Below, in pieces: positions 18,376 through 40,600 of a stretch of DNA of 64,000 nt. The stretch is from Macrostomum lignano (lineage: Eukaryota): NCBI GenBank assembly GCA_002269645.1, contig NIVC01002273.1, forward strand, positions 1 through 64,000. The letters are read 5' to 3'. Position 1 is the first letter of the stretch; each line of letters starts with the position of its first letter. A model generated the notes under the pieces. The model was not told where the DNA came from. It saw only the letters and a program-made list of their open reading frames with translations, and did not search any database. The translations under genes and the position numbers were made by a program.

Positions 18376-18749
18376 GCGTCTCATATGCACCACGGTCAAG
18401 GCAGGTGGTGGCAAGGCACATCCGTGAGTGGCTAGCTTACTGCAAGCAGACCCGCTGCAGTCCTGTATCCTGTCCGCTGAACAGCCTGCTCGACTACCTG
18501 GCCAGCCTAGTCGGGACGCGTTTGCGTGCGTACGGCAGCGTTGCTTCTGTCGCCAGCTCGCTGTCCGTTTGGTTTCGCGTCAACTCTGCACCAGACCTGA
18601 CGAAGCATGCCGCCACGACTCTCCTCCTGCGAGGCGCCAAGCGAGAGCTGGGACTTCGGGTGTCGAGAAAACGACCAGTATCGCCGCTCATGTTGTCGGA
18701 GATTCATCAGCGAGTCAGTCGTTCTGACGGGCTTCAGCTGGCATGCTGG
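18330..18749 (+). pseudogene. Tyrosine recombinase, N-terminal part (interrupted)
   Basis: LLGVSYAPRSRQVVARHIREWLAYC..LDYLASL..LLLRGAKR..KRPVSPLML..QLACW ends exactly at the Gypsy TSD. Confidence 0.85.
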
Positions 18750-19577: not shown

Positions 19578-19583
19578 TAATTT

Positions 19584-19600
19584 TGGAGGTCCCACCGAGA
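19584..19600 (+). promoter_or_regulatory. Primer-binding site, tRNA-Gln type
   Basis: tggaggtcccaccgaga 6 nt after the LTR; complementary to the conserved eukaryotic tRNA-Gln 3' end (..tctcggtgggacctcca). Confidence 0.85.
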
Positions 19601-23300: not shown

Positions 23301-26152
23301 ACAAGGTCGCATTCCTGGGGTTCGTTGTGTCTAGCCGGGGCATTGAGGCTGACCCAGCGAAGACTCAGGCTGTCCAAGACTGGCCTAAACCGCTTTCTAA
23401 GAAACAGCTTCTATCATTCTTGGGATTTGCGAATTATTACCGGAAATTCGTGCCGCGATTCTCAATCATCGCCACGCCTTTGTATGCCTTAGCCAAAAAG
23501 GATGCTCCGTTTCTATGGCAACCGCATCATGAACGGGCTTTCCAAGAACTCAAACATAGCCTCTGTTCACCACCGATTCTGGCGTATCCAGACCTCTCTG
23601 CCAAAGGGCGCGAATTTATTTTGGACTGCGATAGCTCGCTTGACGGCACTGGGGGTGTGCTGTACCAGCTCGGGCCAGATGGCCAAGAGCAAGTTATAGC
23701 TTACGCATCCAAAAAATTCAACAGTAGCCAGAGAAACTACTGCGCCACCATGAGGGAGTTGCTAGGGCTCGTTCTGATGCTCGAGCATTTCCGTCCTTAT
23801 CTATTAGACAAGCCTTTCACTGTCCGGGTGGACGCGGCCGCGCTCAAATGGCTGCATTCTAAGAAGCATGCCACTGGTATGCTGGCCCAATGGCTTGCCA
23901 CCATTGAACTGTACCCGCTGAAGGTCCAGCAGTCCACTCTAGAACGAATAGCCGAATACGATTTCACAGTCCAGTACCGTCCAGGCGTTGACCACGTGCC
24001 TGCTGACGCTCTTAGTAGACTGCCAAAATTCAGAGCCGATCACTTTGACTGCCCGACGTGCAGCCAGATTCCGGAATTTAAAGGGAAATTCCTGGACCAA
24101 GACCCAAAGCACCGGCGTACGCCCCCCTCTAGAGAACTGCGTCAGGTGTGCGTCCAGACCATAGGCATTAGCGTAGCGTGTCAGACTGACACAGATGCCC
24201 CGGCTGAACCAACGCCGAATGTCCGCGCTACTGCTAGCGGTGCTGTTCCTAGCCCAGAGACTGAATCCCGTCAACCTGAAACCGAATCCCAAGTGCCACC
24301 TGAGCTCATCTGGGCCCAGAATGCCCAGGACTCCTGTGTTGACATGGCGCGCCTAATCGCCAGTGTCCAGTGTAAGACTGAGCCATTGTCCAAGGCCGAA
24401 CTGCAGGGTTGTAGCCGGGAAATGCGCTCACTCTGGGCTCAATTCAATGACCTTGAAGTAGTCGAGGGTCTATTGTACTTAGCCAAATCCTCCAAAGCCA
24501 AGACTGCCAACAGGCGCCTGGTGGTGCCTGAGACCGCAGACGTCGGTCATCTGGTCCTTCAGTATCATGGCCAGTTGAACCATTGCGGTATCACCAAGAC
24601 GATGGCCGCCCTGAAGGCGCGCTTCGTTATTTCCGACTTAGATACTATAGTCAAGGGGGTCCTGGCCGAATGCACCGTTTGCGCTAAGACTAAGAAGTCA
24701 AAGCGTAAGCTCAAGGCCCCTATGCAACCAGAACTGTCCGGCTACCCGAACCAGGTTGTCCACGTGGACCACGCAGGCCCGTTCGAAGAGTGTGACGGGT
24801 ACAAGTACCTGCTGGTTATGATCGACAGGTTCACCGGGTTTGTTGAAGTAGTCCCTGTTCCCGACGTCAGCGCAGAGACCACTGCCACAACCATCCTGAC
24901 TGAATGGGTTGCCAGGTATGGGGTGATGGAGCAGCTGGTGTCTGATAACGGAACTGCCTTCATCAATAGTACCATGATAGAATTAACTAGGCTCCTACAG
25001 ATTGACATGGGTCGGATCACAGCCCGTCGCCCTCAGGCTAACGGTAAAGCTGAGAGGATGATCCAGACGGTGAAAGCCCAGATTAGAGCCATCTGTCTTG
25101 AGAGACAATGCGACTGGCCCCTTGCCAGCCGCCTGGCCGCCCTGTCAATCCGTGCCACAGTCGCCGAATCCACCGGATTTACTCCAGCCAAACTTTTCTT
25201 CGGGCGTGAGTTCGAACTACCGCTCGACCTCTGTCACAATCCACCGCCAAATGAACACTACCAGCCGGAGAGGTACGCCCACCAGTTGCACCGCACGCTA
25301 GTCGAAACCTCTGCCCTAGCCCGCCGCACTAGGGGTAAAGCCCAGGAGAGGCAGAAAAGGTATTACGACCGCCGCGCCCTCCGCGCTGAGTTCCACGAGG
25401 GAGAGTTAGTCTGGGTCTTGAACCCGAACCACAAGGGCATAGAACCCGCTGTGTGGTTGGGGCCATACCGAGTAGTGCAGCGCTGCTCCGAGCGGACTTA
25501 CCGTTTAGTCCCCGAGTATGGTCTCCTAAACCCAGCAGATCGGGTGCCAAATCCGCGCCATAACATTTACAACATTGACCGCCTCAAACCGTGCATCAGA
25601 CAGCCCACTTACCAAGACGTAGTTGACCGGTATGGTGAGGCCACCCATGCCAGGTCTCCAGCGCCTAGTGTGAACCCGCCCAGCGGACCCGCGAGCGAGC
25701 TTAGCCTCGTCACCATTCCCCAGCCTTCCTCTGCCCGGCCAGAGAGCCCACGCAGAGCGCCAGGGCCAAATCCACCACCGCCAGCTTCAGGCGCCTTTGA
25801 GGAGGGGGCGGGAGCTGAAGCGGGAGAAGGCCAACCATTCGCCGAAGCTGGCGATGCTGTAGCTATTGAGGGACAGCCACAACCAGACACTGACACTGAC
25901 AGCACAGACACTGACACCAGCCACAGCCAAGACAGCTCAGAGTCGCTGTACACGGCTTCCTTGGGGGACCCTTCCTCCGAGCAATTAGAACCACCTGAGA
26001 TTGCTGCGAATCCAGTCGCTGCGCAAGCAGCTGAGCCACCAGCCCCGGCTGACGTACCCAGATCCAGGTACGGACGCCCCATCCGCCCGCCTGTCAGGTA
26101 CCGGACCTGTCAAGTGTCCGACCTGCTCCAGCAGTGGGGAAGCAGACACTAA
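20387..26152 (+). CDS. Gypsy gag-pol polyprotein, 1921 aa, single frame
   Basis: Gag; CCHC knuckle CHRCGQTDHLIADC (21377-21418); cold-shock-like domain (21509-21703); protease LDSG (21824); RT (SPIVLVKKKDG, LCIDYR, YLDD at 23174); RNase H (DCDSS, NYCATMREL); integrase (H-x3-H..CTVC, VDHAG, SDNG, KAERM) and GPY motif. Confidence 0.98.
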   Translation: MSDNGDNHAAASLADGDAVVPDQDAVDAGEQPAGAAAAAAPAPSEQLLLTQTLASLHRMLEERLAVSSPLAPNSSPPAKPDIRLRPPIAYQPKMNFDTWEAQLTSYLATCRVPEDQKSAILVSLLSAECQEVYLNYRCDQLPFESALRLLRERYTDAKKKDKAYVELVAAAQSHNEQMSDFFDRLVSYSRLAGLSLAEAKPLLKARFCHGLRDKDLAEKLLLWDQETDSATSAEELMQKAKDLVGVRQLLNVPSTIAKVRAIEPDAEKKALEQRVAELEKMVTDQANRLSQTTPPVTTNQGPARTEPTGGPPQVSQTYRQPRPAPRPPRACHRCGQTDHLIADCPSPSPRPQSPKQPRGSQNQQPSRGKVTTELGTIATWSQNYGFIQSEHLPEKLFVHISQLSPSLRSLVEQHRLRGTRVKFQRQVDPGRQHDKACNVQPQPGDSDPQCRQGGYTADTFESSYFVQLGVGDSKVLACLDSGANASIMGADVKAKLVAADPVNNIFTPSANKQRATAFGGSQVDILGSLRCEINLGNTTKQHVFLVTAYCTTEALLGMDFLRSFEMLLDFNSGRALVAGVSVPVIEGDKGIFQLRRVMAAGTVELPPHSETLIPSRVLDSSPYTSGIVMSRILGPETEQLVAKTLDSVSDTNHILVRVLNSGEQPIQITRGQEIASFQELDSHEVIAQTTLKESDFSLDNVANLTSQLSKLPPPSRELAKWLTTQFQLDQAKLSRGQLATVLKLLNYFNSQISRSNADLGHTNLHEMGIELIDPKAKPVAQPYRRTTPAQKEFLDQNIAQMLEQGVIEECDSDWVSPIVLVKKKDGTQRLCIDYRAVNKLIKPCSFPLPLIEESFDSLAGATVFSSLDLTSAYWQVGIKEEARDYTAFACPQGTFRWKVVPFGIKTAPANFAKLMHKVFRPLLMKVSLIYLDDIIIKAVNNDQMIAHLALVLWQLRKAGLKIKPSKCELFKDKVAFLGFVVSSRGIEADPAKTQAVQDWPKPLSKKQLLSFLGFANYYRKFVPRFSIIATPLYALAKKDAPFLWQPHHERAFQELKHSLCSPPILAYPDLSAKGREFILDCDSSLDGTGGVLYQLGPDGQEQVIAYASKKFNSSQRNYCATMRELLGLVLMLEHFRPYLLDKPFTVRVDAAALKWLHSKKHATGMLAQWLATIELYPLKVQQSTLERIAEYDFTVQYRPGVDHVPADALSRLPKFRADHFDCPTCSQIPEFKGKFLDQDPKHRRTPPSRELRQVCVQTIGISVACQTDTDAPAEPTPNVRATASGAVPSPETESRQPETESQVPPELIWAQNAQDSCVDMARLIASVQCKTEPLSKAELQGCSREMRSLWAQFNDLEVVEGLLYLAKSSKAKTANRRLVVPETADVGHLVLQYHGQLNHCGITKTMAALKARFVISDLDTIVKGVLAECTVCAKTKKSKRKLKAPMQPELSGYPNQVVHVDHAGPFEECDGYKYLLVMIDRFTGFVEVVPVPDVSAETTATTILTEWVARYGVMEQLVSDNGTAFINSTMIELTRLLQIDMGRITARRPQANGKAERMIQTVKAQIRAICLERQCDWPLASRLAALSIRATVAESTGFTPAKLFFGREFELPLDLCHNPPPNEHYQPERYAHQLHRTLVETSALARRTRGKAQERQKRYYDRRALRAEFHEGELVWVLNPNHKGIEPAVWLGPYRVVQRCSERTYRLVPEYGLLNPADRVPNPRHNIYNIDRLKPCIRQPTYQDVVDRYGEATHARSPAPSVNPPSGPASELSLVTIPQPSSARPESPRRAPGPNPPPPASGAFEEGAGAEAGEGQPFAEAGDAVAIEGQPQPDTDTDSTDTDTSHSQDSSESLYTASLGDPSSEQLEPPEIAANPVAAQAAEPPAPADVPRSRYGRPIRPPVRYRTCQVSDLLQQWGSRH

Positions 26153-26156
26153 CCGC

Positions 26157-26400
26157 CAGTTTTTCACGCCCCGGGCAAGGCGTAAAACTACCTCCTGTGG
26201 CACCTGTCAGCCACAGGTCTCTGCGGCACCTGTAGACCGCAAGTTCACGCCCCGGGCAAGGCGTAAAACTACCTCCTGTGGCACCTGTCAGCCACAGGTC
26301 TCTGCGGCACCTGTAGACCGCAAGCTCACGCCCCGGGCAAGGCGTTAAACTACCTCCTGTGGCACCTGTTGGTCACAGGTCCCTGCGGCATCTGCCAGCC
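26157..26400. repeat. 81-bp tandem repeat x3 after pol stop
   Basis: cacgccccgggcaagg recurs at 26165, 26246 and 26327. Confidence 0.9.
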
Positions 26401-27369
26401 GCAAGCCACAAAACACAAGCCACAGCTGTTACTCACTGCCAGATACTAGTGTGCACAACTTCCACAGCTGTACCAGCCAACAGCCAACCACCGTAGTCAA
26501 GGGGATAAACTGCAGCGACATTGCAATTTGATAATTTATATAGCTAACTAAAATAAATAAAATAAAAATAAAACACTAGCAGAATTAGCATAATATGCCG
26601 ACAGTATAAATACTATATTGTTCTAACGCAAGAATATATATAATATCGCAGCACCCAACTCCGACTGCACCTGGTCGGCGTTGCCGTAGTCTATAGAATA
26701 CACTACGGCGCTAGAAACAAATAGTAGATAAGACATTAGCCTTAGCTCAAATATTCAAAAGTAAACTAAAAAATTAATGCATAAATATGGCATAAAATAA
26801 TGCATATATTGGTCGAAAAATGATTACGAGATGAATACTATAAATATAATAGTTGTCAAAATATTCTGTAGACGTCCTCTGCCTGCATCGGCGTTGCCAT
26901 AATCGATAAAATACACTAGGGCACGTATAAACATTATAGCAATGGCAAAAATGATTAAAATAATTGATAGCAATGGCACCCGTTCGGTGTTGCCAAAGTC
27001 GATGAAATGAATAAGTGCGTCATCTCTGACGCTAATAGTAATACCCCGAAACCATGTAATGTGCAATATACGGTTAGTAATTAAAGCATAACTACTGGCG
27101 ACTAGTGAAACGCATAAATAACTCAAAAAGGAAAATAAAAACTGAAAAAACAACCATTGAAAACTCGAGAAAAATATTCTGCCTATAAGAATATAGCTAG
27201 CTTAGTTCGCTGCTCAGCCCATTGACGAGTGCAGCATCGCTTTCGCTGTTGTCGGAAATGAGCTGTAGCTCGTCATTAAATTTCGCAAATTTCATAATGT
27301 AGCTAGATATATATAATTCTTGTGGGGTAAAAGTAAGCACTACACACACACACACCGCACCGCACGCAC

Positions 27370-27830
27370 GCTCTCTCTGCCTTTGGCGCGTAGCGCCGTC
27401 CTCCGCCTGGCGCGCTGCGCCGTCCTCTGCCTTTGGCGCGTAGCGCCATCCTCTGCCTTGGCGCGTAGCGCCGTCCTCTGCCTTTGGCGCGTAGCGCCAT
27501 CCTCTGCCTTGGCGCGTAGCGCCATCCTCTGCCTGGCGCGTGGCGCCGTTCTCTGCCTTGGCGCGTGGCGCCGTCCCCTGCCGTGGCGCCCTGTCGCCGT
27601 TTCCTGCCTTGGCGCGTGGCGCCGTTTCCCGCCTTGGCGCGCTGCGCCGTTCTCCGCCTGGCGCGCCGCGCCGTTCTCCTGCCTTGGCGCGCTGCGCCGT
27701 TTCCTGCCTTGGCGCGCTGCGCCGTTCTTTGCCTTGGCGCGCTGCGCCGTGTCTCCGCCTTGGGCGCTCTTGCGCCGGTTTCTCCCTTCCGCCTTGGCGC
27801 GCCGCGCCGTGTCCCGCCGCCCTTGACGCT
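27370..27830. repeat. GC-rich degenerate minisatellite inside the Gypsy 3' region
   Basis: Variants of cgccgtcctctgccttggcgcg(ta/ct/tg)g. Confidence 0.85.
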
Positions 27831-28301
27831 TGGCGTCGTTTGCCCGCAGTTGTCCGGACTGTGCCTCTGTTCCGTGCCTCTGCTCTGCATCCTTTGCCTC
27901 ATCCACCTTGTCATCCTTGTTCTGTGTTTGCCTCATCCATCGTATCACTTCTGCGCGTCCTTTGTCGTTTTTGTGTTCGCGCGCGCCGCGCGCTCCGTCG
28001 TGCACTACTTTCCGTAACCATTGTTGTATTTTGTAATGTTTTTGTAACACCACCATGTTGTATTGCTCGTGCTCACCGTGTTCTACTGCCCTGTAATGTT
28101 CTGCTCTCGTAATAGTCTGTAGCCTTTGGAACTTTGTAATTTTGTCCGGTAATCATATGCTCATACAAACTGACTCAACCCCACTGTAATTCACTCTGCT
28201 ATAATTTCATAAACTGCGGTCACGTTGTGTTTTTCTTGCCGTCACCCCGCGTGTTGGTTTTCTTTTTGCGCGACCCTATCCTTTTTCGGAAGGGAGGCGG
28301 G

Positions 28302-29129
28302 TGTGACGTTGTCAGTTTAAGGTGGTCCCGAAAAGGGCCGTTGGACTGCTGTTCTCCATAGTCATTCAACCCTTCAGTTTCACCGTTTCAACTAAACTTT
28401 TCCATTCGTTTATTGCGACGTTTACTTGTAGTAGTGCCCAACGATTTTGTGGCAATTTCTAATTCACTGTATATTTTGCTATCCTCTCTCGCGACCGTAT
28501 AAAATTGGCACGATCGATAATTTTAAGTTCTCTCGCCAGCCAATGAAATCACTCGTGCTCGCGCTACCCCCCTCTGCGCTCTTTTATTAAACCCCCCGCC
28601 TGGCGGCGGGCACCCCTCACGCTTTTTCGTCTCTCCCCGCCTGTCCCTTGTTTCCTTCCCTGCGGCCTCTTAGCTGTCTTATCTGTTTGTCTGGCTGCCT
28701 CGAGCCTCCTTATTTCTCACCACGGCCCTTCTGTCTGGGCCAGCCTGCTCACACACTTACTTGACTGTTTCACGCCACGACCGACGCCAACTCACCACTA
28801 CGTTTCACTGCCTTCACTGTGCTCATAGCCACTGCTCACGTCACGTCGCCATTGTGTCATTCGCCTGCCACTTGACTTCATATCCAAATTATATTCAACC
28901 CATTGCTGCAGCCGCCAGTGCCCAGAAAGCTATAGTCTGTTTATTGCCAGTAACAACCAAACTTAATACTGATATTAACAATAAAGACAACTACGGCAGT
29001 TCCTGCCTTTATCGCCAAGTGCTCCGCTACAAAATCCGCTTTACAAGAATTGACTTCAACTTATTTTGGGACTAAAACGGCCCTTTTAAGGGTCACCGCA
29101 TAGCTGGCCGCTACGCCAATAACGTGACA
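28302..29129 (+). repeat. 3' LTR
   Basis: Direct repeat of 18750-19577, preceded by the PPT and followed by TSD ctgg. Confidence 0.97.
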
Positions 29130-29700
29130 CTGGGCAGTCACCATCTGCTGTTGGTGGGGCATGCTCCGAAAATCCAGCGTGCTGCCGACTTCGGGAAAAG
29201 GTCCGGCACGTGTGCGCTGCGCTGACATCTTTCGACACCCGCGAGGTCTGATCTTGCGCCTGGAGCAAGGGAAGACTCTCCAGTTCAAAGAGCGGGTGCA
29301 CCAGGTGCTTCTACTCGTACCAAGGCTAGTGAGGCGGACGTCGCTGTGCCCGGTGTTAGCAATCGAGCAGCACGCAAGATTCAATAATCTGCAATCGGCT
29401 GATGCGCCTCTGTTCACTTATCGCGACGCCGGAGGCAACCAGCGGCTGCTGACGGGCAGGCAGCTCGATCGCTTCCTAGCGGACAAGCTAGGGGCTGCGG
29501 GCTTCAGGCGTGAGCACTTCTCAGCCCACAGCCTCCGCCGTGGCGGCGCGACCTGGGCCTCGGTGTTGGGTGTGCCGGTGCCCGACATCATGCGGATCGG
29601 TGACTGGAAGAGCGATTCAGTGCAGCGGTATCTACCGCAGTCGCAGCAGGGCTTGGCAGCTTCCGTCGTGTTTGCTAGAGGTGTGGGATCCCTCGTTTGA
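29130..29700 (+). pseudogene. Tyrosine recombinase, C-terminal catalytic part
   Basis: Removing the Gypsy element and one CTGG restores QLACW-AVTICCWWGMLRKSS. Catalytic R (LRKS), HSLRRGGAT, GDWKS and Y (VQRYL) are present. Confidence 0.92.
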
Positions 29701-30165
29701 CGTTGGCATCAGCTTTTCGATGTTCCGTTTCCTTCAATTTTTTTCTTTCGCGCGCTTTCCCGTTGTTGCTTCGGCTTTGGAGGCCTCGTTACTGCTTTCG
29801 CTTTCGCCAACATCGCGTATTCGTGTTTTGCTTTGGGGCACTAAGGCTGCGGTTTGCGCTAGGCTTGCCTTGAGCAAACCGGCTTTAGTGCCCAAGCGCG
29901 CTGCGTCTGTGGTGCGCCCCCCCCCGCCGCGTGTGTACGTTCTGTGTTGTTTAGGTGGGCCCCTCACCCCTCCGCCGGCGGGGGGGGGGGTATTTTACTC
30001 CAGCCGCGCTGCTGAGTTGGCAGTGTTTTCGCGCAGCTCTTTTTTTTCTTCTTCTTTTATCCTTATTCTTTTAATCAATAAAATATAAATAAAGAGGCCT
30101 CGTTACTGCTTTCGCTTTCGCCAACATCGCGTATTCGTGTTTTGCTTTGGGGCACTAAGTATCTA

Positions 30166-30697: not shown

Positions 30698-31856
30698 CTT
30701 ACGAGTACCTATTGCATACAGTCGTGTAAAAACACCGCGTCGAATAACAGATTTTTTATGCCAGCTAGATCTATAACGCTGAGATAACGCACGCAGCATC
30801 GGTCTTCTTGACCTTTACATGGTTTAGCGCAAATCTAAGATCTACGAAAAAAATTGTGTGAAATTGCGCGCATCGAGAGGCAGAAGTTTATTTTGTAACT
30901 CGTAGGAAGCGCTACAAAACTTCAAAGCTTGCGTATTGACATGACGTATTTTTAGCATTCGTAGATTTTTTAGCAGAATTTTTGGTTTTTTGCAGGCTAT
31001 TGGACAACATTTTCAGTTACAGATTGGCATTTTGAAAGCTTCAGAAATTCGCCTCTGAAGTGCGGTGTTGTGTACATCCGCAGACCCATAATAGGCTACT
31101 TCTAGAAATATTTTCACCACCTTAAAATAGCCATCAGTCCGTCTGTTGTCTGCTTGCCTACCCATAGGTATCTGTCAATGTGTAGACTCATTAGACATAT
31201 CCAGCAACATAAGAATTTACATCTAGTTACATGTATGTGACACCCATCATGCAGAAATATCCTATTATTATAGTTAACTTAGCACAACTATTCCTACCCC
31301 AAGAACAAAATTGAACGATTAAAAGTGTTCTGTTGATATAGATTCACAGCCTGCTCATGCAAATTTTCGGTCGGTTTTAAGCTAGATCTTATATATTTTC
31401 ACGGTTAAATGGTAACACATGTATACACACAAGCTGTGACAACCGAATTGCATAATTAGGTAGCTCGATTGCATTTCACTGCTGTTAAGCTCCAGTCCTC
31501 ATTCCAGGCAGCAGAAGCAGTGACTGAAACATTCGGCCGCTACAGCATGGTATGTATTGTAAATAAACAGTACACTTAGTGACTTTCACTTGACTACAAA
31601 CTTCTCTGGAGATCAGCAAACACCAAAGGAGATGAGAGCTTTAATTAATCTGGAATAATGTAGAATCGCGTTATACAAAATATAAATCAGAATAAAAATG
31701 TATATTGCAAACTCTATATAAAATGGAAAAGCCGACTAAGAAATAAAGCAGTCGTGATGTCAAAATATTCGGATTTAAATTACAAGGAAAATAGTCTACT
31801 ATCAGTAATCTTTAAAGCATTCAACGATTTTCAAATCGCATCACAGTTCTTAAAAA

Positions 31857-32099
31857 TCACATTGACATGGGCTTGAAACTGACATCGCATTTTTTGCAAT
31901 GCAGAGTCGGACTATCCGGCGAGATGCAGCAGCCGCCCAGTTTCACTCGACCGGCCTCGGCGCTGGCCATCAGTTCCGAGCTGGGCCGGCCATAGACTAT
32001 GGGCACGATCACCGAGCTATCGGCGTTCAACTGATGGCCACATTGTGGACACGCTTCATCGCTTTCTGCAGATTGCTGCTGCCGCTTTTGTTCGCTCAT
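31857..32099 (-). CDS. Small Cys-rich putative Zn-binding protein, 80 aa (paralog 1)
   Basis: Intronless ORF: CPQCG..VPIVYGRP..LM..AEAGRVKLGGCCISPDSPTLHCKKC. The motif is conserved with 33748-33957. Confidence 0.8.
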   Translation of the reverse strand: MSEQKRQQQSAESDEACPQCGHQLNADSSVIVPIVYGRPSSELMASAEAGRVKLGGCCISPDSPTLHCKKCDVSFKPMSM

Positions 32100-32174
32100 T
32101 CGTACTTGTGAACTCCCATGCAATTGGTCCAGGACGGCAATAATAAACTAATGTACATGAAGACACTTATAAAC

Positions 32175-33200
32175 AGCGGGTCTCAAGGGCTGTTTGGGAG
32201 CGGGTCTCAACGGCTGTTTGGGAGCGGGTCTCAATGGCTGTTTGGGAGCGGGTCTCAACGGCTGTTTGGGAGCGGGTCTCAACGGCTGTTTGGGAGCGGG
32301 TCTCAATGGCTGTTTGGGAGCGGGTCTCAAGGGCTGTTTGGGAGCGAGTCTCAACGGCTGTTTGGGAGCGAGTCTCAACGGCTGTTTGGGAGCGGGTCTC
32401 AAGGGTTGTTTGGGAGCGAGTCTCAACGGCTGTTTGGGAGCGGGTCTCAACGGCTGTTTGGGAGCGGGTCTCAACGGCTGTTTGGGAGCGGGTCTCAACG
32501 GCTGTTTGGGAGCGGGTCTCAATGGCTGTTTGGGAGCGGGTCTCAAGGGCTGTTTGGGAGCGAGTCTCAACGGCTGTTTGGGAGCGAGTCTCAACGGCTG
32601 TTTGGGAGCGGGTCTCAAGGGTTGTTTGGGAGCGAGTCTCAACGGCTGTTTGGGAGCGGGTCTCAACGGCTGTTTGGGAGCGGGTCTCAACGGCTGTTTG
32701 GGAGCGGGTCTCAACGGCTGTTTGGGAGCGGGTCTCAACGGCTGTTTGGGAGCGGGTCTCAAGGGTTGTTTGGGAGCGAGTCTCAACGGCTGTTTGGGAG
32801 CGGGTCTCAACGGCTGTTTGGGAGCGGGTCTCAACGGCTGTTTGGGAGCGGGTCTCAACGGCTGTTTGGGAGCGGGTCTCAAGGCCTGTTTGGGAGCGAG
32901 TCTCAACGGCTGTTTGGGAGCGGGTCTCAAGGGTTGTTTGGGAGCGAGTCTCAACGGCTGTTTGGGAGCGGGTCTCAAGGGTTGTTTGGGAGCGAGTCTC
33001 AACGGCTGTTTGGGAGCGGGTCTCAAGGGTTGTTTGGGAGCGAGTCTCAACGGCTGTTTGGGAGCGGGTCTCAAGGGTTGTTTGGGAGCGAGTCTCAACG
33101 GCTGTTTGGGAGCGGGTCTCAACGGCTGTTTGGGAGCGGGTCTCAAGGGTTGTTTGGGAGTGGGTCTCAGGGCTGTTTGGGAGCGATAAAAAGGCCGGGC
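32175..33200. repeat. 24-bp minisatellite
   Basis: Unit gggtctcaacggctgtttgggagc, about 42 copies, between the two small genes. Confidence 0.97.
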
Positions 33201-33747
33201 TGTTTGGGAGACAAGTTTAGACCGTATATGAATGTTTTAAAGCGATTCCTAAAGAGTTATTTAACGTTTTCAGAGAGCTCAGAAAAAGGATATCAAGTTA
33301 ATTTGAAACGCGTGAGAGAATAAACTCTTTATCAAATCCAATTTTAATATCAAAATAGACTTATTTGAAGTATCACAGATTTATAATTAAACACAAAGCA
33401 AAAAATGTTAAAAAGAAGCACAAAGGCAAAAACGAATATTAAAAAAAATCATGTACAGGTAGATACGCTTATGTCCAATAAAAATTCAAAAGTACACGAA
33501 TATCCTAAAAGTTTGAGAGCTTTGGTTTTTGTATATCCTCAATGAAAAGAGTTAAATTTTAAAAAACATATAAGTTACTAAGAGTAGCGTAAAATGTTTC
33601 AAAGAATTATGCTCCTAATTCCACGGAAAAACGAAATTGTTCCATAAATTCATTCTCTTACTGGCTGTGATGCTTGATCGATATTGGAGTCAAACAGTAT
33701 AAAAATTGAACTGTACTTCGGCATGAGTGGATTTTTTCCCCAAAATG

Positions 33748-33957
33748 TTACGGACGAAAATCGAATTTGCACGCTTCGCAGTGCTTGGTTGGACAATTGG
33801 GCGATACGCAACAGCCGCCCAGTTTCACAGCGCCAGACTTGGCCTTCTCCATCAGTTGGTGGTTTGGTTTGCCATAGACTATGGACACCACGTGTTCTGA
33901 GCTGTTGCAGTTGGGACAGGAGGAACTCTTCTGCTTGTCTGGCTGCTTCTGATCCAT
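33748..33957 (-). CDS. Small Cys-rich putative Zn-binding protein, 69 aa (paralog 2)
   Basis: MDQKQPDKQKSSSCPNCNSSEHVVSIVYGKPNHQLMEKAKSGAVKLGGCCVSPNCPTKHCEACKFDFRP. Amino-acid motif shared with paralog 1 while synonymous sites differ. Confidence 0.8.
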   Translation of the reverse strand: MDQKQPDKQKSSSCPNCNSSEHVVSIVYGKPNHQLMEKAKSGAVKLGGCCVSPNCPTKHCEACKFDFRP

Positions 33958-34647
33958 GATGATGCTATGAACCAGAGCTGGGGCTGCAACTGTTGGATTA
34001 ACCCGAACCAATTGCATTGACGACTGACAACATGATGCTATTTTTAGAATTACGTCAGTTTCTATATTTAAATCGGAAGTTAAATTCCCTTAGTTTGGAA
34101 ATGGAAATCAGATTTCCTGATTAAAATGCATGCACAGTATAACAGATTTCCACTTTACTATATTAAGTTTACATATAAGTTTATACTTGCTAATGAATTC
34201 AAATAGTTATTTATAGTTTGTTACGGATTAAAAAAACAAAAGGCAAAGGCGACCATAAAATTTAGCGATGAATGGACAGATTTCCGTAGACTTTATTAGA
34301 GCGAATAAATATATTGCCGCTGCATAGAAAACTTCATTTGAAACAAGAAGAAAGGTTTTTCTCACACTTCTATCATAGGGGAAGCTGCTAAATAAATTAT
34401 CTGAATTAATGAGCAATTCAATAACATTTTCAGAAACTGATATACATGTGTCATCTGTATAATACGAATACTGCAAAATTAAAAATCGATATAAAATATG
34501 ATAATTAGCAGAGCTAAAGCACTAGAGCAGAAAAACCGTTAGCAATTGGAAAAAGTTATGGCAAAATTCATGGAAATTCCATGGAAAATCCTGAAAACTT
34601 GACAAACAATGGTCAAGAAAGTTCAATTTTTCAACCCCGGAAAAAGT

Positions 34648-37600
34648 TCAAGCCTCCTCGGTGACGCCCATCACGTGCCGATTAAACCACAGCACGATGT
34701 CGACAAACACGCTGCTCTGAACTGGGACGCTGCTCATCGGATGGCAATCGTCAGGACACACCAGCAGCCTAGTTGGCACATTCCTCGCTCGCAGAGCCCG
34801 GTACAGCTCCCGACCCTGCTGCGGCGGCACCCGGAGATCCTTGAGTCCCACAGCGACCAGCGTCGGCGTGTTGACTTTGGACGCGTGCGACAGCGGAGAC
34901 TTGGACCACAGCAGGGCCAGGGTCTCCGCGTCCAGCAGGCGGTCGTGGCTGAATGGCAGGCCGCTCTGCTCGTAAACCCAGTCGGGAATGTCGCTTCCGC
35001 CGACCATGGTGGCCAGGTTGATCACCGGGTTGCGCAGCACGGCGGCTTTGAACATGCCGGGCCGCTGGCCAATCAGGTGGCCCCCGAGAAAGCCGCCGTG
35101 CGAGCCGCCAAACGCGGCGAGTTTCTCACCATCAAGACGAGGCAGCGCGGAGTTATCAGCGGACGAAGCCGACTCGGCCAGCGTCTCCTCCACTGCCTGA
35201 ATGCAGTCGGACACGTCGCGCTCGCCAATGCCGCCGAGCAGGGAGTCGACGGTCGATTTGCCGAATCCGAGCGAGCCGCGGTAGTTGATCACCAGGACAG
35301 CGTAGCCGCACCTGGTTGAGGTAAGTATGCAGACTTGGGGAAACTCGCTCACCCGCTACCCACCTCACTTCCCGCCCGACACTCACCTCACTCCCTGCCC
35401 CGACACCCACCTCACTGCCTGCCCCGACACCCACCTCATTCCCTGCCCCGACACCCACCTCACTGCCTGCCCCGACACCCACCTCATTCCCTGCCCCGAC
35501 ACCCACCTAACTCCCTGCCCCGACACCCACCTAACTCCATGCCCCGACACCCACCTCACTCCCTGCCCAGACACCCACCTCACTCCCTGCCCCGACACCC
35601 ACCTCACTGCCTGCCCCGACACCCACCTCACTGCCTGCCCCGACACCCACCTCACTGCCTGGCCCAACACCTAGCTCACTGCCTGCCCCGACACCCACTC
35701 ACTCCTTGCCCAGACACCCACCTCACTCCCTGCCCAGACACCCACCTCACTCCCTGCCCCGACACCCACCTAACTCCCTGCCCCGACACCCACCTCACTA
35801 CCTGCCCCGACACCCACCTCACTGCCTGCCCCGACACCCACTCACTCCTTGCCCAGACACCCACCTCACTCCCTGCCCCGACACCCACCTAACTCCCTGC
35901 CCCGACACCCACCTCACTACCTGCCCCGACACCCACCTCACTCCCTGCCCCGACACCCACCTCACTGCCTGGCCCGACACCCACCTCACTGCCTGCCCCG
36001 ACACCCACCTCACTCCCAGCTAACACAAAACAAATCTATAGTGCACCTGGCTAGTCCGCAGACGTAGCGCATATAAGTAGCGGTAAACGATGTGTTAGGT
36101 CCGCCGTGCGGAAACGCGATCAACGGAAGCGGCAGCTCAGTGATTGCTGCTGGCTTCTCTTCGTCTCCCTTTTTGCTATCCTTCTTCTTAGACGAGTCAA
36201 CTGGCCACACTAGAATCGATTCGAACAATTGATTCCCGAATTCGGGATGGGCCAATTTCGCCGTGTGCTGCTTCACCCGCCAGGCGATGTCGTTCAGCTT
36301 GAAGCAATCGGTCAGACAGGTCCACTTAATGTTTGAAGTCAGCGGCTTGCTTGCGTCAATGAATCCAGCAGCGATAAATGGCGGCACGTCTGGCGCGCTG
36401 GCCTCAACAACCAGCCAGTCGCGATGAAAGTCCAAGACTTTAGCGCTGCTCGCATCTGGCGGTAGCGGCAGCAGCTCGCCGATCTTGGTCCTGACGTCAA
36501 TCGCCAGCAGGCAATCTTTGCTCCGATTGATGCTGCTAAGAACGACGGTGCGACAGTTGGAGGACCAGCAGCGAGACGGCAGGCTGTCGGCGTAAATTCC
36601 TGGAAAGCCTGCGCTGCCAGCCTGCGTAGGGAGGAATGGCACTGATTACAGCTGAGACTGAGGCACTGATTACAGCTGAGACTGAGGAACTGATTACAGA
36701 TGAGACTGGGGCACTGATTACAGCTGAGACTGAGGCACTGATTACAGCTGAGACTGAGGCACTGATTACAGCTGAGACTGGTGCACTGATTACAGCCTGA
36801 GACTGGGGCACTGATTACAGCCTGAGACTGAGGCACTGATTACAGCTGAGACTGAGGCACTGATTACAGCTGAGACTGAGGCACTGATTACAGCTGAGAC
36901 TGAGGCACTGATTACAGCTGAGACTGAGGCACTGATTACAGCTGAGACTGAGGCACTGATTACAGCTGAGACTGAGGCACTGATTACAGCCTGAGACTGG
37001 GGCTCTGATTACAGCTGAGACTGAGGCACTGATTACAGCTGAGACTGAGGCACTGATTACAGCTGAGACTGAGGCACTGATTACAGCCTGAGACTGGGGC
37101 TCTGATTACAGCTGAGACTGAGGCACTGATTACAGCTGAGACTGAGGCACTGATTACAGCCTGAGACTGGGGCTCTGATTACAGCTGAGACTGAGGCACT
37201 GATTACAGCCTGAGACTGGGGCTCTGATTACAGCCGGAGACTGAGGCACTGATTACAGCTGAGACTGAGGCACTGATTACAGCTGAGACTGAGGCACTGA
37301 TTACAGCCTGAGACTGGGGCTCTGATTACAGCTGAGACTGAGGCACTGATTACAGCTGAGACTGAGGCACTGATTACAGCCTGAGACTGGGGCTCTGATT
37401 ACAGCTGAGACTGGTGCACTGATTACAGCCTGAGACTGGGGCTCTGATTACAGCCGGAGACTGGGGGTCTGATTACAACCCTAACACCCACCCCGCGATT
37501 ACGCACATGATTAACAAAATCGATAATGAACCGTATATCCTTCGTGGCCCAATCGCACCAGATGAGCCTTCTGCACTGTTTATGCGGACCTGATGGCTCA

Positions 37601-39344
37601 TTCTGCAGCCACACCAGCTGGGTCTGGCACGGGCTGAACCTGGGCGATGACACGGCTCGAGTATCGTGACCAATCACCGCGCACTCTCCGCTGCGAAAGT
37701 CCAGATAGTAAATAGCAGACGGCCTCTGATTGCAGTAGATTACACCCAGCTGATAGGGCAGCTCCTTGTAGCCAACAAAGACTACGCCAGCATCGTCAGG
37801 AGCCCAGCAAGGTTCCGTTGGCAGCACGCCGTTGGGTATGCCATCGTCAAGCACGGTGACGACCTCGGAGTCAACATCGAGAGTGCACAGTACTGGTCGC
37901 TTGTACTCGGATAGTTGCTCGCCAAAGTGTTCCACGCTATCATACTGCTTGCCAACTGATTTGGCCTCGCCAGATCTGTGAAAAAAATAGATAGACAAAA
38001 ACGCTTTACCTAAATATTTTACAAGCTCAAATTCAGGACTTTAGGAGATTGTGGTGTCTCAGCAGACTAACACAGGAAACACGAGTACGTGGCAGGTAAG
38101 ATTTTTTGCCGGAAAAAAGTGCGAGCTCCACTTAGGGCAACCCGCGCTTATATTTGATATTTAACAGTAAATTGTTACACGATCGAATCCGCCAAAATGT
38201 CACGTGATTAAAAATACGTTTCACAATACAATATACGAATAATTTATTAACTGCACTACTTAAAGTAGAGTAGTAAGAAAAAGTAAGAAAAGGTTAGTTA
38301 GACGAACGGCCCTTTTACGGGCTCCTAGTCACGACACAACAGAAATGTAGTTAATATAGTTAATAATAATATTTAATTGATTACACCTGCCCAAATTGGG
38401 CCAGATGTGCAACCGACAGCTCAGCCGCAGCTATTGCGCGGCGCATCTGAAGGCTGCGTACGGCTGTTCAGTCCACGGACTGATAGAGGGGGGGGGTCGC
38501 CACACACCCTCAATTACCCCAGCTAATGCTGGCACCCAGCAGAGCAAGTTCCAGGTTCGATTCCAAATTTATATTTATCTGGCTCTCGTGCACAAAAATT
38601 CATTTGGGGCTTCCGCAATTCTCGCCACCAAGGGTCAACCCGGGCCATTAGGCACCCAGTGTACACTGTCTGTGCCTAACGAACAGAAACTGAGCGTGTG
38701 CCTGATTACTCATCCGTGCAAGTGTTCAGTGGTCAGTTAAAGGTGCATGATGACTGCTTTAATCGCTACAGAATGTAAAAAACAACAACTTACTTTCCGG
38801 CGCTCTCTCCGCTAAACGCATCAGCGGCAAAGTAAGACACATTCTTTGGCTGTTTCTTTTCGGCAACGTACAGCAGATGTCCCTCATTGTAGGACCACTG
38901 GCACGCGCCCAGCTCGGGACCGTACACCGCCCCGTGCTTGGCTTTCTCGCTCAGATCGATGCTCTTAATAAAACGGGACTCATTGTAGACGTGGACTACG
39001 AATTTATCGGCATTGTCACTGCCGGACCCTTCAGCTTTGAGCTTGAGCAGCACGGCCCGATGGTCGCCCCCGCTGCAGTAGACATCCCACAGGGTGGTCG
39101 GATCCCGCAGTACAGGATCCGAGTCAACCAGATCTCCAGTTGGCAGTACAACGGCAGTTTTCACCAGCGTGCGATTCTTTTGACTAGCCAAATCTTGCAC
39201 CTGATAGGCGCACCGAGTTCTGATGGCGTCGCTGAACGGATACTGAGGCAACAGCTGGGCAGACTGCGGCATTGGATAGGCGGCCAGGTCAGAATAGACC
39301 TGAGCCACCTCCTTGGCTGACTTCACAAATGATGGCTTCATCAT
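34648..39344 (-). CDS. APEH: Acylamino-acid-releasing enzyme / acylpeptide hydrolase (peptidase S9C), about 752 aa
   Basis: Exons 39344-38794, 37975-37507, 36621-36047 and 35311-34648 join in frame (2259 nt) with GT-AG sites. HGGP motif; catalytic Ser (GGSHGG), Asp (GLKDLRV) and His (DDCHPM). Confidence 0.95.
35370..36020. repeat. 24-bp minisatellite in APEH intron 3
   Basis: Unit cccgacacccacctcactccctgc. Confidence 0.95.
36638..37480. repeat. 24/25-bp minisatellite in APEH intron 2
   Basis: Unit gcactgattacagctgagactgag and variants. Confidence 0.95.
38362..38538 (-). mobile_element. SINE family A, 5'-truncated copy in APEH intron 1
   Basis: gatgtgcaaccgacagctcagccgcagctattgcgcgg..cacaccctcaattaccccagctaatgctggcaccc matches 16385-16530. 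Confidence 0.85.
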
Positions 39345-39504
39345 TAAGCTGAGTGATTGCGAACCTGCGACTTCTGCTTTTTGCGAGGCGAATAGAAGGG
39401 AAGAAAATCAGAAAAATTATAATATAGTTGTTTTGCTAGTTGAGACGATATAAACGGTAGGAAATAGAGGAAAAACGCCTCTAAGAAGCAGGTTCTAACT
39501 AGAT

Positions 39505-40600
39505 CCACTGATGGGGAGGGGATTATAACTAGATCCACTGATAAGGAGGGGATTATAACTAGATCCACTGATGGGGAGGGGATTATAACTAGATCCACTG
39601 ATAAGGAGGGGATTATAACTAGATCCACTGATAAGGAGGGGATTATAACTAAATCCACTGAAAAGGGGATTATAACTAAATCCACTAATAAGGGGATTAT
39701 AACTAAATCCACTGATAAGGGGATTATAACTAAATCCACTGATAAGGGGATTATAACTAAATCCACTGATAAGGGGATTATAACTAAATCCAGTAATAAG
39801 GGGATTATAACTAAATCCAGTAATAAGGGGATTATAACTAAATCCACTGATGGGGAGGGGATTATAACTAAATCCACTGATGGGGAGGGGATTATAACTA
39901 AATCCACTGATAAGGGGATTATAACTAAATCCACTGATAAGGGGATTATAACTAAATCCACTGATAAGGGGATTATAACTAAATCCAGTAATAAGGGGAT
40001 TATAACTAAATTCACTGATGAGAGGATTATAACTAAATCCACTGATAAGGGGATTATAACTAAATCCACTGATGGGGAGGGGATTATAACTAAATCCACT
40101 GATGAGGGGATTATAACTAAATCCACTGATGAGGGGATTATAACTAAATCCACTGATGAGGGGATTATAACTAAATTCACTGATGAGGGGATTATAACTA
40201 AATCCACTGATGAGGGGATTATAACTAAATTCACTGATGAGAGGATTATAACTAAATACACTGATGAGATGGGGACTATAACTAAATCCACTGATAAGGG
40301 GACTATAACTAAATCCACTGATGAGGGGATTATAACTAAATCCACTGATGAGGGGATTATAACTAAATCCACTGATGAGGGGATTATAACTAAATCCACT
40401 GATGAGGGGATTATAACTAAATCCACTGATGAGGGGATTATAACTAAATCCACTGATGAGGGGATTATAACTAAATCCACTGATGAGGGGATTATAACTA
40501 AATCCACTGATGAGGGGATTATAACTAAATCCACTGATGAGGGGATTATAACTAAATCCACTGATGGGGAGGGGATTATAACTAAATCCACTGATAAGGG
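39505..40600. repeat. 27-bp minisatellite upstream of APEH
   Basis: Unit ggggattataactaaatccactgatga with variants. Confidence 0.95.

What the first reader, a model, noticed from the sequence alone, without database searches (positions are those of the whole stretch)
31857..33957. Tandem pair of intronless mini-genes resembling a bacterial Cys-rich protein family (possible horizontal transfer)
Two head-to-tail ORFs of 80 and 69 aa share CPxC..V(P/S)IVYG(R/K)P..LM..A..G.VKLGGCC(I/V)SP..PT.HC..C. Their DNA has diverged while this motif is kept, which indicates purifying selection. From memory, the CPxCG..PIVYGxP..LGGC..P..C..C pattern is typical of uncharacterised small bacterial proteins, and I do not recognise it as an animal family. 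The genes sit among SINEs, minisatellites and a spliced APEH gene, so contamination is unlikely. Intronless, duplicated and host-embedded fits a domesticated horizontally acquired gene.
Basis: partly seen in the sequence, partly recalled or inferred. Interest (0 to 1): 0.72.

Follow-up and report, generated by a model that had tools for sequence, protein, structure and literature searches.

The report
Bacterial-type zinc-ribbon mini-genes in flatworm
Two tiny intact genes next to the APEH gene of the flatworm Macrostomum lignano belong to a large, unnamed, mostly bacterial family of zinc-ribbon proteins. They were most likely gained by horizontal transfer and are apparently expressed as trans-spliced downstream genes of a host transcription unit.

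Summary
Two minus-strand ORFs, A (31857-32099, 80 aa) and B (33748-33957, 69 aa), share the described Cys-rich motif. Their flanks do not align.

The window is Macrostomum lignano contig NIVC01002273.1. Two further contigs carry the same APEH, B, A order, which rules out contamination.

A profile of the pair finds 2,542 relatives (E<=1e-3). These include 37 loci in at least six bacterial phyla, bacterial lipoprotein forms and fusions to OmpA, dockerin and MobA-like domains. No Pfam, NCBIfam, PADLOC or PDB family covers it.

Both genes keep all 14 family-constrained residues (P=3e-6). Both are GC-rich islands in AT-rich spacer, and all three contigs carry intact copies. Their GenBank models come from a transcriptome-based annotation and start 2 nt after an AG acceptor. 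With spacers under 1 kb, this fits a trans-spliced APEH-B-A operon.

HGT cannot be proven formally. The alien index is about 1, the 57-column tree is unresolved, and three other eukaryotic members exist: a bdelloid rotifer, a marine transcript and a protist-like contig. The biochemical function is unknown; a zinc-ribbon fold is predicted.

One oddity: in this contig, gene A's acceptor is replaced by the 3' end of the spliced leader.

The parts
31857..32099 (-). Gene A coding sequence (80 aa, MSEQKR...KPMSM). It matches GenBank BOX15_Mlig009883g3. It is a zinc-ribbon domain with a 15-residue polar N-terminal tail.
   Evidence: The protein is identical on all three contigs, with 2 synonymous and 0 nonsynonymous differences from the homeolog. 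GC is 0.56 and GC3 is 0.63, against 0.31-0.35 in the spacers.
32100..32116 (-). Gene A 5' UTR, by homology to the annotated partial CDS. The exon starts at 32116 (GGAGTTCACAAGTACGA, then ATG).
   Evidence: P0001 starts with SSQVG, 15 nt plus 2 nt upstream of the ATG. In L001 and L040 this is exactly 2 nt after 'aattttcAG'. The acceptor matches the published [T/C]TNCAG motif.
32117..32124 (-). ATTGCATG, the last 8 nt of the M. lignano spliced leader, sits where the other two contigs have the TTTCAG acceptor. It may be a written-back mRNA junction or an assembly artefact.
   Evidence: These are the only 4 differences from L040 in 800 bp, and they are consecutive. The SL sequence comes from PMC8629364.
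32175..33185 (.). 24-bp minisatellite of 42 copies in the B-A spacer. Copy number differs between contigs: about 35 in L040 and about 2 in L001.
33748..33957 (-). Gene B coding sequence (69 aa, MDQKQP...FDFRP). It matches GenBank BOX15_Mlig009883g2. It is a zinc-ribbon domain with a 13-residue polar tail.
   Evidence: It is intact on all three contigs. Its six differences from the homeolog are all nonsynonymous and all lie at unconstrained positions. GC is 0.52 and GC3 is 0.64.
33958..33991 (-). Gene B 5' UTR (33958-33989) and the AG of the acceptor 'taatccaacAG' (33990-33991). A second AG lies 6 nt downstream (TTGCAG) and fits the [T/C]TNCAG motif.
   Evidence: P0002 and P0152 start with AAPALV, 2 nt after the AG. 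The sequence is identical on all three contigs.
34648..38887 (-). Host APEH (acylamino-acid-releasing enzyme) gene, spliced. Its last exon is 34648-35352. It is the presumed first gene of the transcription unit. Its stop codon lies about 660 bp upstream of gene B's acceptor.
   Evidence: Pfam APEH_N and Peptidase_S9 hit the called product. The best named hits of the last exon are animal APEH at 49% identity.
31640..31645 (-). ATTAAA, a candidate poly(A) signal 212 nt after gene A's stop codon. This is weak evidence.
   Evidence: There is no canonical AATAAA after either gene.

Best explanation
A and B are two domesticated genes of foreign, ultimately bacterial, origin. Each encodes little more than one copy of an uncurated domain of about 55 residues. 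This domain is a classical two-knuckle zinc ribbon (CPxC ... CxxC). Between the first strand and the second knuckle it carries an insert of about 28 residues: YGxP turn, helix, G.V.LGGC. The acquisition predates the M. lignano genome duplication, because the diverged homeologous contig also carries both genes. The genes have no detectable promoter of their own. They sit 0.6-0.7 kb apart (after subtracting repeats) downstream of APEH on the same strand, and their annotated mRNAs start at AG acceptors. I therefore infer that they are transcribed as part of an APEH-B-A polycistronic unit and matured by spliced-leader trans-splicing. That is also the likely route by which a promoterless foreign ORF first became expressed. 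The products would be small cytosolic or nuclear proteins without a signal peptide. Each probably binds one Zn through C17/C20/C68/C71 (gene A numbering) and acts as a compact binding module. The invariant GGC cysteine (C57) is the family-specific functional candidate.

Shown: the ORFs, family membership, a family distribution that is predominantly bacterial in the subset I sampled, host embedding on three contigs, retention of constrained residues, and acceptor-adjacent CDS starts.

Inferred: transfer direction, operon transcription, zinc binding, and function as a binding module.
For: Family size and bacterial distribution. Bacterial-only fusion partners (OmpA, dockerin, MobA-like NTP transferase) and lipoprotein-type N-termini. 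No curated family. Host embedding on three contigs next to spliced APEH. Constraint: 14 of 14 constrained residues kept (P=3e-6); dN/dS about 0.4; gene A protein identical across homeologs with only synonymous changes; GC3 of 0.63-0.64 against spacer GC of 0.31-0.35. Expression and trans-splicing: the NIVC annotation is purely transcriptome-based, and gene boundaries were cut at experimentally mapped SL and poly(A) peaks. Both partial CDSs begin 2 nt after an AG, and gene A's acceptor TTTCAG equals the published [T/C]TNCAG motif. The names Mlig009883g2 and g3 place both genes in one transcriptional unit. Spacers meet the published operon criterion of under 1 kb after subtracting repeats. Fold: AF2 mean pLDDT is 84, with strand 31-35, helix 41-49 and hairpin 66-75. 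The knuckles align to L37Ae and TFIIS ribbons with the insert between them, though not significantly (E=0.16-0.3).
Against: Formal HGT metrics fail. The best bacterial hit has E=2.1e-15 and the rotifer hit has E=4.9e-15, giving an alien index of about 0.85. The NJ tree on 57 columns gives no supported placement; an A+B clade appears in 0 of 200 bootstraps. Three other eukaryotic members are among the top 14 non-self hits and are mildly closer to A and B than random family members, so the direct donor could be a eukaryote. I could not show that Mlig009883g1 is APEH, because one search did not return the M. lignano protein. I saw no RNA reads myself. B shows 6 nonsynonymous and 0 synonymous changes between homeologs. 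In this window the canonical acceptor of A is absent. Neither gene has a canonical AATAAA. There is no structural or functional homolog in the PDB.
Confidence: 0.62

Rival explanations
1. The direct donor was another eukaryote, or the family is an old and patchily retained eukaryotic lineage that itself came from bacteria long ago. M. lignano then inherited it or received it from a protist, alga or prey organism rather than from a bacterium.
For: P0015 lies on a 23-kb, 60% GC metagenome contig between Med10 and P4-ATPase flippase genes, which is a eukaryotic nuclear context. P0007 is a Tara/MERC eukaryotic transcript and is gene A's nearest neighbour (35 of 200 bootstraps). The rotifer copy P0005 is another member. 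Eukaryotic members have raised mutual centred similarity (p about 0.003, on a biased sample).
Against: There is no supported eukaryotic clade (0 of 200 bootstraps for A+B+P0005+P0007). The raw nearest neighbours of A and B include confirmed bacterial sequences at the same 53-59% identity. The sample used was selected by similarity to A and B. The great majority of sampled family members are prokaryotic.
Confidence: 0.2
2. A and B are not an in-situ tandem duplication. They were acquired separately, or were co-transferred as two paralogs that had already diverged.
For: A and B are only 50% identical over 56 columns, against a family median of 43% and a 95th percentile of 54%. B ranks 51st of 214 among A's neighbours by identity. 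An A+B clade appears in 0 of 200 bootstraps. The flanks are unalignable. Proteins with two copies of the domain exist in metagenome-derived members, for example P0016.
Against: By BLOSUM score, A is B's best match outside its own homeolog, and B or its homeolog ranks 2nd to 7th for A. Adjacent head-to-tail position and shared C-terminal F(K/R)P and PT.HC features favour one event followed by duplication and saturation (dS about 1.2).
Confidence: 0.15
3. The ORFs are neutral leftovers: a decaying foreign insertion caught in read-through transcripts of the APEH 3' region, with no function in the worm.
For: B has 6 nonsynonymous and 0 synonymous differences between homeologs. Gene A's acceptor is lost in this contig. 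There is no canonical poly(A) signal. No phenotype or expression table mentions them.
Against: All six ORF copies are intact on three contigs. All 14 constrained residues are retained despite about 54% divergence. B's six changes avoid constrained positions. The coding GC islands are sharply bounded. Gene A has only synonymous change, while its flanks are 3-4% diverged.
Confidence: 0.07
4. This is bacterial contamination or a chimeric assembly.
For: None beyond the bacterial affinity of the protein family.
Against: The same arrangement occurs on three long contigs, including a homeolog with 91-97% identity. The genes lie between a spliced APEH gene, host minisatellites and an LTR retrotransposon.
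Confidence: 0.01

Closest known systems
Classical zinc ribbons: Pfam Zn_ribbon_8 / FmdB CxxC_CxxC_SSSS (PF09723, TIGR02605), and the ribosomal eL43/L37Ae and TFIIS/RPB9 C-terminal ribbons
   Same: Two Cys knuckles (CPxCG ... W/H-C-x-x-C), each followed by a beta strand. Sub-threshold hits to these models occur in 35 of 94 family members.
   Different: No member reaches a gathering threshold; A scores 15 bits against a cut-off of 34.4. An insert of about 28 residues with the invariant YGxP...LGGC signature separates the knuckles. Foldseek finds no PDB match.
Foreign genes domesticated in bdelloid rotifers, and other prokaryote-to-animal transfers (established knowledge, not tested here)
   Same: A small intron-free ORF of bacterial type embedded among host genes. 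A member of this same family sits in the bdelloid Didymodactylos carnosus, next to a microbial-type PARG gene.
   Different: The host is a macrostomid flatworm. My literature search found no paper on horizontal transfer into Macrostomum. The protein is too short for standard HGT indices.
SL trans-spliced operons of M. lignano (Wudarski 2017, PMC5730564; PMC8629364)
   Same: Same strand. Repeat-adjusted spacers are under 1 kb. The 5' ends of the downstream genes lie at AG or [T/C]TNCAG acceptors. The genes are named as g2 and g3 of one transcriptional unit.
   Different: Membership rests on the annotation, not on reads I could inspect. According to PMC8629364, trans-spliced M. lignano genes are mostly conserved genes, so foreign mini-genes would be atypical cargo.
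Uncharacterised phage protein A0A6J5TE54 (BFVD)
   Same: This is the only significant structural match: TM 0.62, rmsd 2.1 Å over 65 columns, E=4.5e-5. It is probably a family member.
   Different: It has no annotation. The family is otherwise nearly absent from the phage, plasmid and IMG/VR collections.

Membership tests
Uncurated CPxC-IVYGxP-LGGC-CxxC zinc-ribbon family (mostly bacterial) | Significant profile match over the whole domain | tested here: met
   A and B score 87-88 bits (E about 1e-26) against the 94-sequence profile. The reciprocal search finds 2,542 hits at E<=1e-3.
Uncurated CPxC-IVYGxP-LGGC-CxxC zinc-ribbon family (mostly bacterial) | All invariant or at least 90% conserved residues present (C17 P18 C20 I34 Y36 G37 P39 G50 G55 G56 C57 P64 C68 C71) | tested here: met
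   14 of 14 are present in both A and B.
Uncurated CPxC-IVYGxP-LGGC-CxxC zinc-ribbon family (mostly bacterial) | Zinc bound by the four knuckle cysteines | not testable with these tools
   Only a confident AF2 model (pLDDT 84) and knuckle alignments to L37Ae and TFIIS are available.
Pfam/NCBIfam zinc-ribbon families (Zn_ribbon_8, FmdB, YnfU) | Score at or above the curated cut-off | tested here: not met
   The best scores are 15.1 bits against 34.4 (Pfam) and 17.9 against 36 (NCBIfam).
Prokaryote-to-animal horizontally transferred gene | Physically linked to bona fide host genes on long contigs | tested here: met
   Three contigs of 83-749 kb carry spliced APEH, and two of them (L001, L040) also a LIM-domain gene; host repeats surround the genes.
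Prokaryote-to-animal horizontally transferred gene | Family predominantly prokaryotic and absent from related animals | tested here: inconclusive
   Bacterial breadth is shown. However, a rotifer, a MERC transcript and a protist-like contig also carry it. Other flatworms could not be surveyed.
Prokaryote-to-animal horizontally transferred gene | Alien index or hU above the usual thresholds (AI>30-45, hU>30) | tested here: not met
   AI is about 0.85 and hU about 1.2 bits when the rotifer hit is counted as metazoan. When it is excluded, AI is at least about 12. The domain is too short.
Prokaryote-to-animal horizontally transferred gene | Supported phylogenetic nesting inside a donor clade | tested here: inconclusive
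   NJ on 215 sequences and 57 columns gives no supported grouping. No ML software was available.
Prokaryote-to-animal horizontally transferred gene | Transcribed and under constraint in the host | tested here: met
   Gene models come from a transcriptome-only annotation. Constrained residues are kept. Evidence for B since the genome duplication is weak.
M. lignano SL trans-spliced operon | Same orientation, repeat-adjusted spacer under 1000 bp, downstream gene trans-spliced | tested here: met
   The spacers are about 660 bp and about 620 bp, within the criterion from PMC8629364. Trans-splicing is inferred from CDS starts 2 nt after an AG.
M. lignano SL trans-spliced operon | SL-containing reads at the acceptor and precursor reads spanning the genes | not testable with these tools
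   No read data are accessible. I could not confirm that g1 is APEH.

The most novel reading that the evidence does not exclude
An undescribed zinc-ribbon domain, widespread in bacteria and marked by an invariant LGGC cysteine, has entered animals that use spliced-leader trans-splicing at least twice: once in a macrostomid flatworm and once in a bdelloid rotifer. In M. lignano it was captured as downstream cistrons of the APEH operon. This would make trans-splicing the mechanism that let a promoterless bacterial ORF be expressed and kept. In addition, the allele in this window carries the 3' end of the spliced leader in place of the acceptor. That would be a footprint of a mature trans-spliced mRNA being reverse-transcribed and recombined back into its own gene, something described for dinoflagellates (my own knowledge) but not, to my knowledge, for flatworms.
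Probability: 0.2. Interest if true: 0.72.

Novelty: new member of a known kind. Interest (0 to 1): 0.52.

Why it matters
M. lignano is a flatworm model with transgenesis and, to my knowledge, RNAi. A clean, experimentally tractable case of foreign-gene domestication in this species would therefore be useful. My literature search found no study of horizontal transfer into Macrostomum.

The locus also suggests a testable general idea. Operons resolved by spliced-leader trans-splicing could offer a ready-made way to express promoterless foreign ORFs.

Separately, the protein family has thousands of members across bacterial phyla but no Pfam, NCBIfam or PDB representative. It deserves to be defined as a new domain family.

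If the spliced-leader footprint in gene A's acceptor is real, it would be direct genomic evidence of cDNA-mediated gene conversion in a flatworm.

Tried and rejected
Steps that led nowhere:
- Contamination or chimera is rejected, because three long contigs share the arrangement.
- Pfam, NCBIfam and PADLOC gave only sub-threshold generic zinc-ribbon hits, both for A and B and for the whole family.
- PDB searches by sequence and by fold gave nothing significant. The tubulin and KaiC rows are noise (E>0.6).
- The family is almost absent from plasmids, phages and IMG/VR: one weak hit in plasmids, one weak hit in phages, and none in IMG/VR. A plasmid or phage vector is therefore not supported.
- The word-index search with A alone found only A itself. 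The search with the family alignment returned few named proteins.
- The GTDB scan with the 94-sequence alignment failed for lack of a conserved stretch. It was rerun with 12 close sequences.
- I tried to show that Mlig009883g1 is APEH by searching with the APEH last exon. The search returned animal APEH proteins but not the M. lignano entry.
- 'Mlig009883' was not found in the paper library or in the supplements of PMC5816591.
- Bacterial neighbourhoods show no conserved operon. The contexts are accessory or mobile-element islands containing TA modules, transposases, a large serine recombinase and PRiA4_ORF3. They gave no clue to function.
Full report
**What is there.** The minus strand of the window carries two small ORFs. 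Gene A runs from 31857 to 32099 and encodes 80 aa (MSEQKRQQQSAESDEACPQCG...FKPMSM). Gene B runs from 33748 to 33957 and encodes 69 aa (MDQKQPDKQKSSSCPNCN...FDFRP). They lie head to tail, with B upstream of A, separated by a 24-bp minisatellite of 42 copies at 32175-33185. BLASTP of A against B gives 55% identity over 47 aa, E=3e-21. At the DNA level only the coding core aligns, and the flanks are unrelated. A six-frame HMM scan finds no third copy in the window.

**Where the window comes from.** Gene A is 100% identical to GenBank 'hypothetical protein BOX15_Mlig009883g3, partial [Macrostomum lignano]', and gene B corresponds to BOX15_Mlig009883g2.
- The window corresponds to contig NIVC01002273.1 (83 kb, L039).
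- Two further contigs of the same assembly carry the same order of APEH, B and A on one strand. NIVC01000172.1 (749 kb, L040) is nearly identical. NIVC01000920.1 (409 kb, L001) is a homeolog with 91-97% identity.
- The upstream neighbour is a spliced acylamino-acid-releasing enzyme gene. Pfam APEH_N and Peptidase_S9 hit its product, and its last exon is 49% identical to mollusc and coral APEH.

Contamination or chimerism is therefore excluded as far as assemblies can show.

**What family the genes belong to.** Neither protein reaches threshold in Pfam or NCBIfam. Only generic zinc-ribbon models give weak hits.
- A profile of the two proteins, searched with HMMER against 1.84 billion cluster representatives, found 2,542 proteins at E<=1e-3 and 116 at E<=1e-10.
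- The consensus is CPxCGS..V.PI.YG.P..E..E.A..G.V.LGGC.....P...C..C.
- Scanning one genome per GTDB species with the single narrow peptide pattern GxVKLGGC[CVM][VI] returned 37 confirmed loci. They lie in Bacillota, Bacteroidota, Chloroflexota, Chlamydiae, Alphaproteobacteria and Desulfobulbia, and include cultured isolates on contigs of up to 1 Mb.
- Five top hits that I looked up lie in ordinary bacterial neighbourhoods containing Uma2, BrnT, HicAB, ParE, MarR, GGDEF, DDE transposases and DnaB_C genes.
- Longer members fuse the domain to OmpA, dockerin, a MobA-like NTP transferase, UDG, TPR, DUF6794 or a DUF6438-like domain. Several have lipoprotein-type N-termini.
- Scanning all 94 sequences of the family alignment against Pfam, NCBIfam and PADLOC again gave only sub-threshold generic ribbon hits.

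It marks a large, mostly bacterial, uncurated domain family.

**Fold.**
- With the 94-sequence alignment, AlphaFold2 gives mean pLDDT 84 (above 90 for residues 30-70). The model has a disordered polar tail, strand 31-35, helix 41-49 and a hairpin at 66-68/73-75.
- Foldseek finds nothing significant in the PDB. In BFVD it finds one uncharacterised phage protein (TM 0.62, E=4.5e-5).
- A profile search of PDB sequences gives non-significant alignments (E=0.16-0.3) of the two knuckles to L37Ae/eL43 and to the Pol II TFIIS-type ribbon. About 28 family-specific residues (YGxP, helix, G.V.LGGC) are inserted between the knuckles.

I therefore read the domain as a classical four-Cys zinc ribbon with a helical insert that carries an invariant extra cysteine (C57). 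Zinc binding is an inference.

**Evidence that the genes are maintained.**
- A and B are 46% identical over 69 aligned columns. All 14 positions that are invariant or at least 90% conserved in the family are identical in both, against 18 of 55 other columns (hypergeometric P=3e-6).
- Nei-Gojobori dN/dS for A vs B is 0.40-0.44, with dS about 1.1-1.2, which is saturated.
- All six ORF copies on the three contigs are intact.
- Between homeologs, A has 2 synonymous and 0 nonsynonymous differences (P about 0.046 under neutrality). Its flanks are 3-4% diverged.
- B has 0 synonymous and 6 nonsynonymous differences. This is not significantly different from neutrality (P about 0.26). All six fall at unconstrained positions.
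- The ORFs are GC-rich islands: GC 0.52-0.56 and GC3 0.63-0.64, in spacers of 0.31-0.35 GC. This leans towards the host APEH exon (GC 0.64, GC3 0.79).

Constraint is well supported for the domain overall and for A. It is weak for B since the genome duplication.

**How the genes are expressed.**
- The NIVC annotation was built only from a genome-guided transcriptome. [quoted passage not shown] The names Mlig009883g2 and g3 therefore mean genes 2 and 3 of one transcribed unit.
- The two GenBank CDSs are 5'-partial. Each begins exactly 2 nt after an AG: 'taatccaacAG|TT GCA GCC' for B, and 'ccaattttcAG|GG AGT TCA' for A on L001 and L040.
- Gene A's TTTCAG equals the [T/C]TNCAG motif reported at M. 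lignano trans-splice acceptors. B has a CAG, and a TTGCAG 6 nt further on (PMC8629364).
- That paper defines operons as same-strand neighbours less than 1 kb apart after subtracting repeats, with a trans-spliced downstream gene. Here the spacers are about 660 bp (APEH stop to B acceptor) and about 620 bp (B stop to A acceptor, minus the minisatellite). The second spacer is 596 bp on L001, where the array is nearly absent.

I infer an APEH-B-A operon resolved by SL trans-splicing. Three things are not verified: that g1 is APEH (one search did not return the M. lignano APEH entry), the RNA reads themselves, and the poly(A) sites (only an ATTAAA 212 nt after A).

**Is it horizontal transfer?** The distribution argues yes. 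There are thousands of members, prokaryotic wherever I sampled them, across at least six bacterial phyla. Bacterial-only architectures are common. Of the 30 top hits whose sources I looked up, none came from a named animal other than M. lignano and one bdelloid rotifer. The formal tests, however, do not work on a 55-residue domain.
- The best confirmed bacterial hit (P0003, E=2.1e-15) and the rotifer hit (P0005, E=4.9e-15) give an alien index of about 0.85 and an hU of about 1 bit.
- An NJ tree of 215 domains over 57 columns has no supported structure. A+B appears in 0 of 200 bootstraps, and A with the marine transcript P0007 in 35 of 200.
- A and B are 50% identical in these columns, inside the family's upper range (median 43%, 95th percentile 54%). 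Tandem duplication therefore rests on adjacency plus modest score ranks.

There are also other eukaryotic members.
- Didymodactylos carnosus carries a single-exon ORF on a 36% GC contig, beside a microbial-type PARG gene.
- A Tara/MERC eukaryotic transcript is a member.
- P0015 lies on a 60% GC metagenome contig between Med10 and P4-ATPase flippase genes, which is clearly a eukaryotic nucleus.
- These sequences are mildly closer to A and B than random members are (p about 0.003, on a sample biased by how it was selected).

I therefore keep a rival at 0.2 in which the direct donor was a eukaryote, or the family is an old and patchy eukaryotic lineage. The ultimate bacterial origin of the family is not in doubt.

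**Function.** Bacterial contexts give no conserved operon. One version of about 190 aa (ribbon plus a DUF6438-like domain) is nearly identical across more than ten bacterial species, mostly Bacillota, plus a Chloroflexota MAG. It sits beside PRiA4_ORF3, DUF6884 and a large serine recombinase, so it is mobile-element cargo. The family is nearly absent from sequenced plasmids, phages and IMG/VR.

My committed reading is that A and B are small intracellular zinc-binding adaptor-type proteins. I put about 0.7 on zinc-ribbon chemistry. My confidence in any specific partner is low.

**An unexpected detail.** In an 800-bp stretch around gene A, the window's contig differs from L040 at only four positions. 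The four are consecutive and convert 'ccaattTTCAGggagttc' into 'ccaattGCATGggagttc'. The result, ATTGCATG at window 32117-32124 (minus strand), equals the last 8 nt of the M. lignano spliced leader (...CAATTTATTGCATG). It abuts the exact first base of the annotated exon. In other words, the genome here reads like the mature trans-spliced mRNA junction.

The 8-mer itself is not rare: it occurs six times in the window on both strands. What is striking is its position and the clustered change. It is either an assembly or polishing artefact, or a footprint of cDNA-mediated gene conversion. If real, it independently confirms the trans-splice site of gene A and removes that copy's canonical acceptor.

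**Verdict.** These are two host-embedded, transcribed, intron-free mini-genes of a bacterial-type zinc-ribbon family. They were most likely acquired horizontally before the M. lignano genome duplication and are expressed through the host's trans-splicing operon system.

It is a new member of a known kind of event, foreign gene domestication in an animal. Two features go beyond the routine: the family is uncurated, and the mode of expression is interesting. Interest is 0.52.

Noticed in passing
window 32117-32124 (minus strand), compared with L040 and L001: Gene A's canonical trans-splice acceptor (TTTCAG on the other two contigs) is replaced here by four consecutive changes. The result is ATTGCATG, the 3' end of the M. 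lignano spliced leader, fused to the first base of the exon. It is either a cDNA-conversion footprint or an assembly artefact.
   Followed up: partly
window 17293-30163: This is an insertion of about 12.9 kb relative to homeolog L001. It contains an LTR pair (18733-19032 and 28285-28584, 98% identical) and an intact 1921-aa gag-pol ORF (20387-26152, + strand; RVT_1, RNase H, integrase). It is a young Ty3/gypsy-type retrotransposon about 1.7 kb downstream of gene A.
   Followed up: partly
window 33748-33957 compared with L001 9193-9402: Gene B differs between homeologs by six nonsynonymous and no synonymous changes (P6R, K10E, V23M, S52T, N54D, E61K). Gene A shows the opposite pattern, with two synonymous changes only. 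The numbers are too small to call positive selection.
   Followed up: partly
whole window, e.g. 615-1563, 12648-13126, 32175-33185, 35358-36017, 36638-37477, 39496-40600, 62518-63997: The window is packed with minisatellites of 12-84 bp units, including inside APEH introns. The 24-bp array between B and A has about 42 copies here, about 35 in L040 and about 2 in L001.
   Followed up: partly
window 34648-38887 (minus strand): The APEH gene model on this contig gives a 599-aa product, against 774-775 aa on the other two contigs. This copy may be truncated or misassembled.
   Followed up: no
L006-L017, L020, L022, L030 (bacterial loci); L016 2533-6340: A nearly identical protein of about 190 aa (this zinc ribbon plus a DUF6438-like domain) occurs in more than ten bacterial species, mostly Bacillota, and in a Chloroflexota MAG. 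It lies next to PRiA4_ORF3, DUF6884 and a large serine recombinase, which suggests recent spread on a mobile element.
   Followed up: partly
L045 5001-5306: A family member (P0015) sits between Med10 and P4-ATPase flippase genes on a 60% GC metagenome contig with compact genes. This indicates an unidentified microbial eukaryote that also carries the domain.
   Followed up: partly
L041 7914-8132 and 1142-2897: The bdelloid rotifer homolog is a single-exon ORF with an in-frame stop and an AG just upstream of its ATG. Its neighbour is a microbial-type PARG gene, probably another foreign gene.
   Followed up: partly
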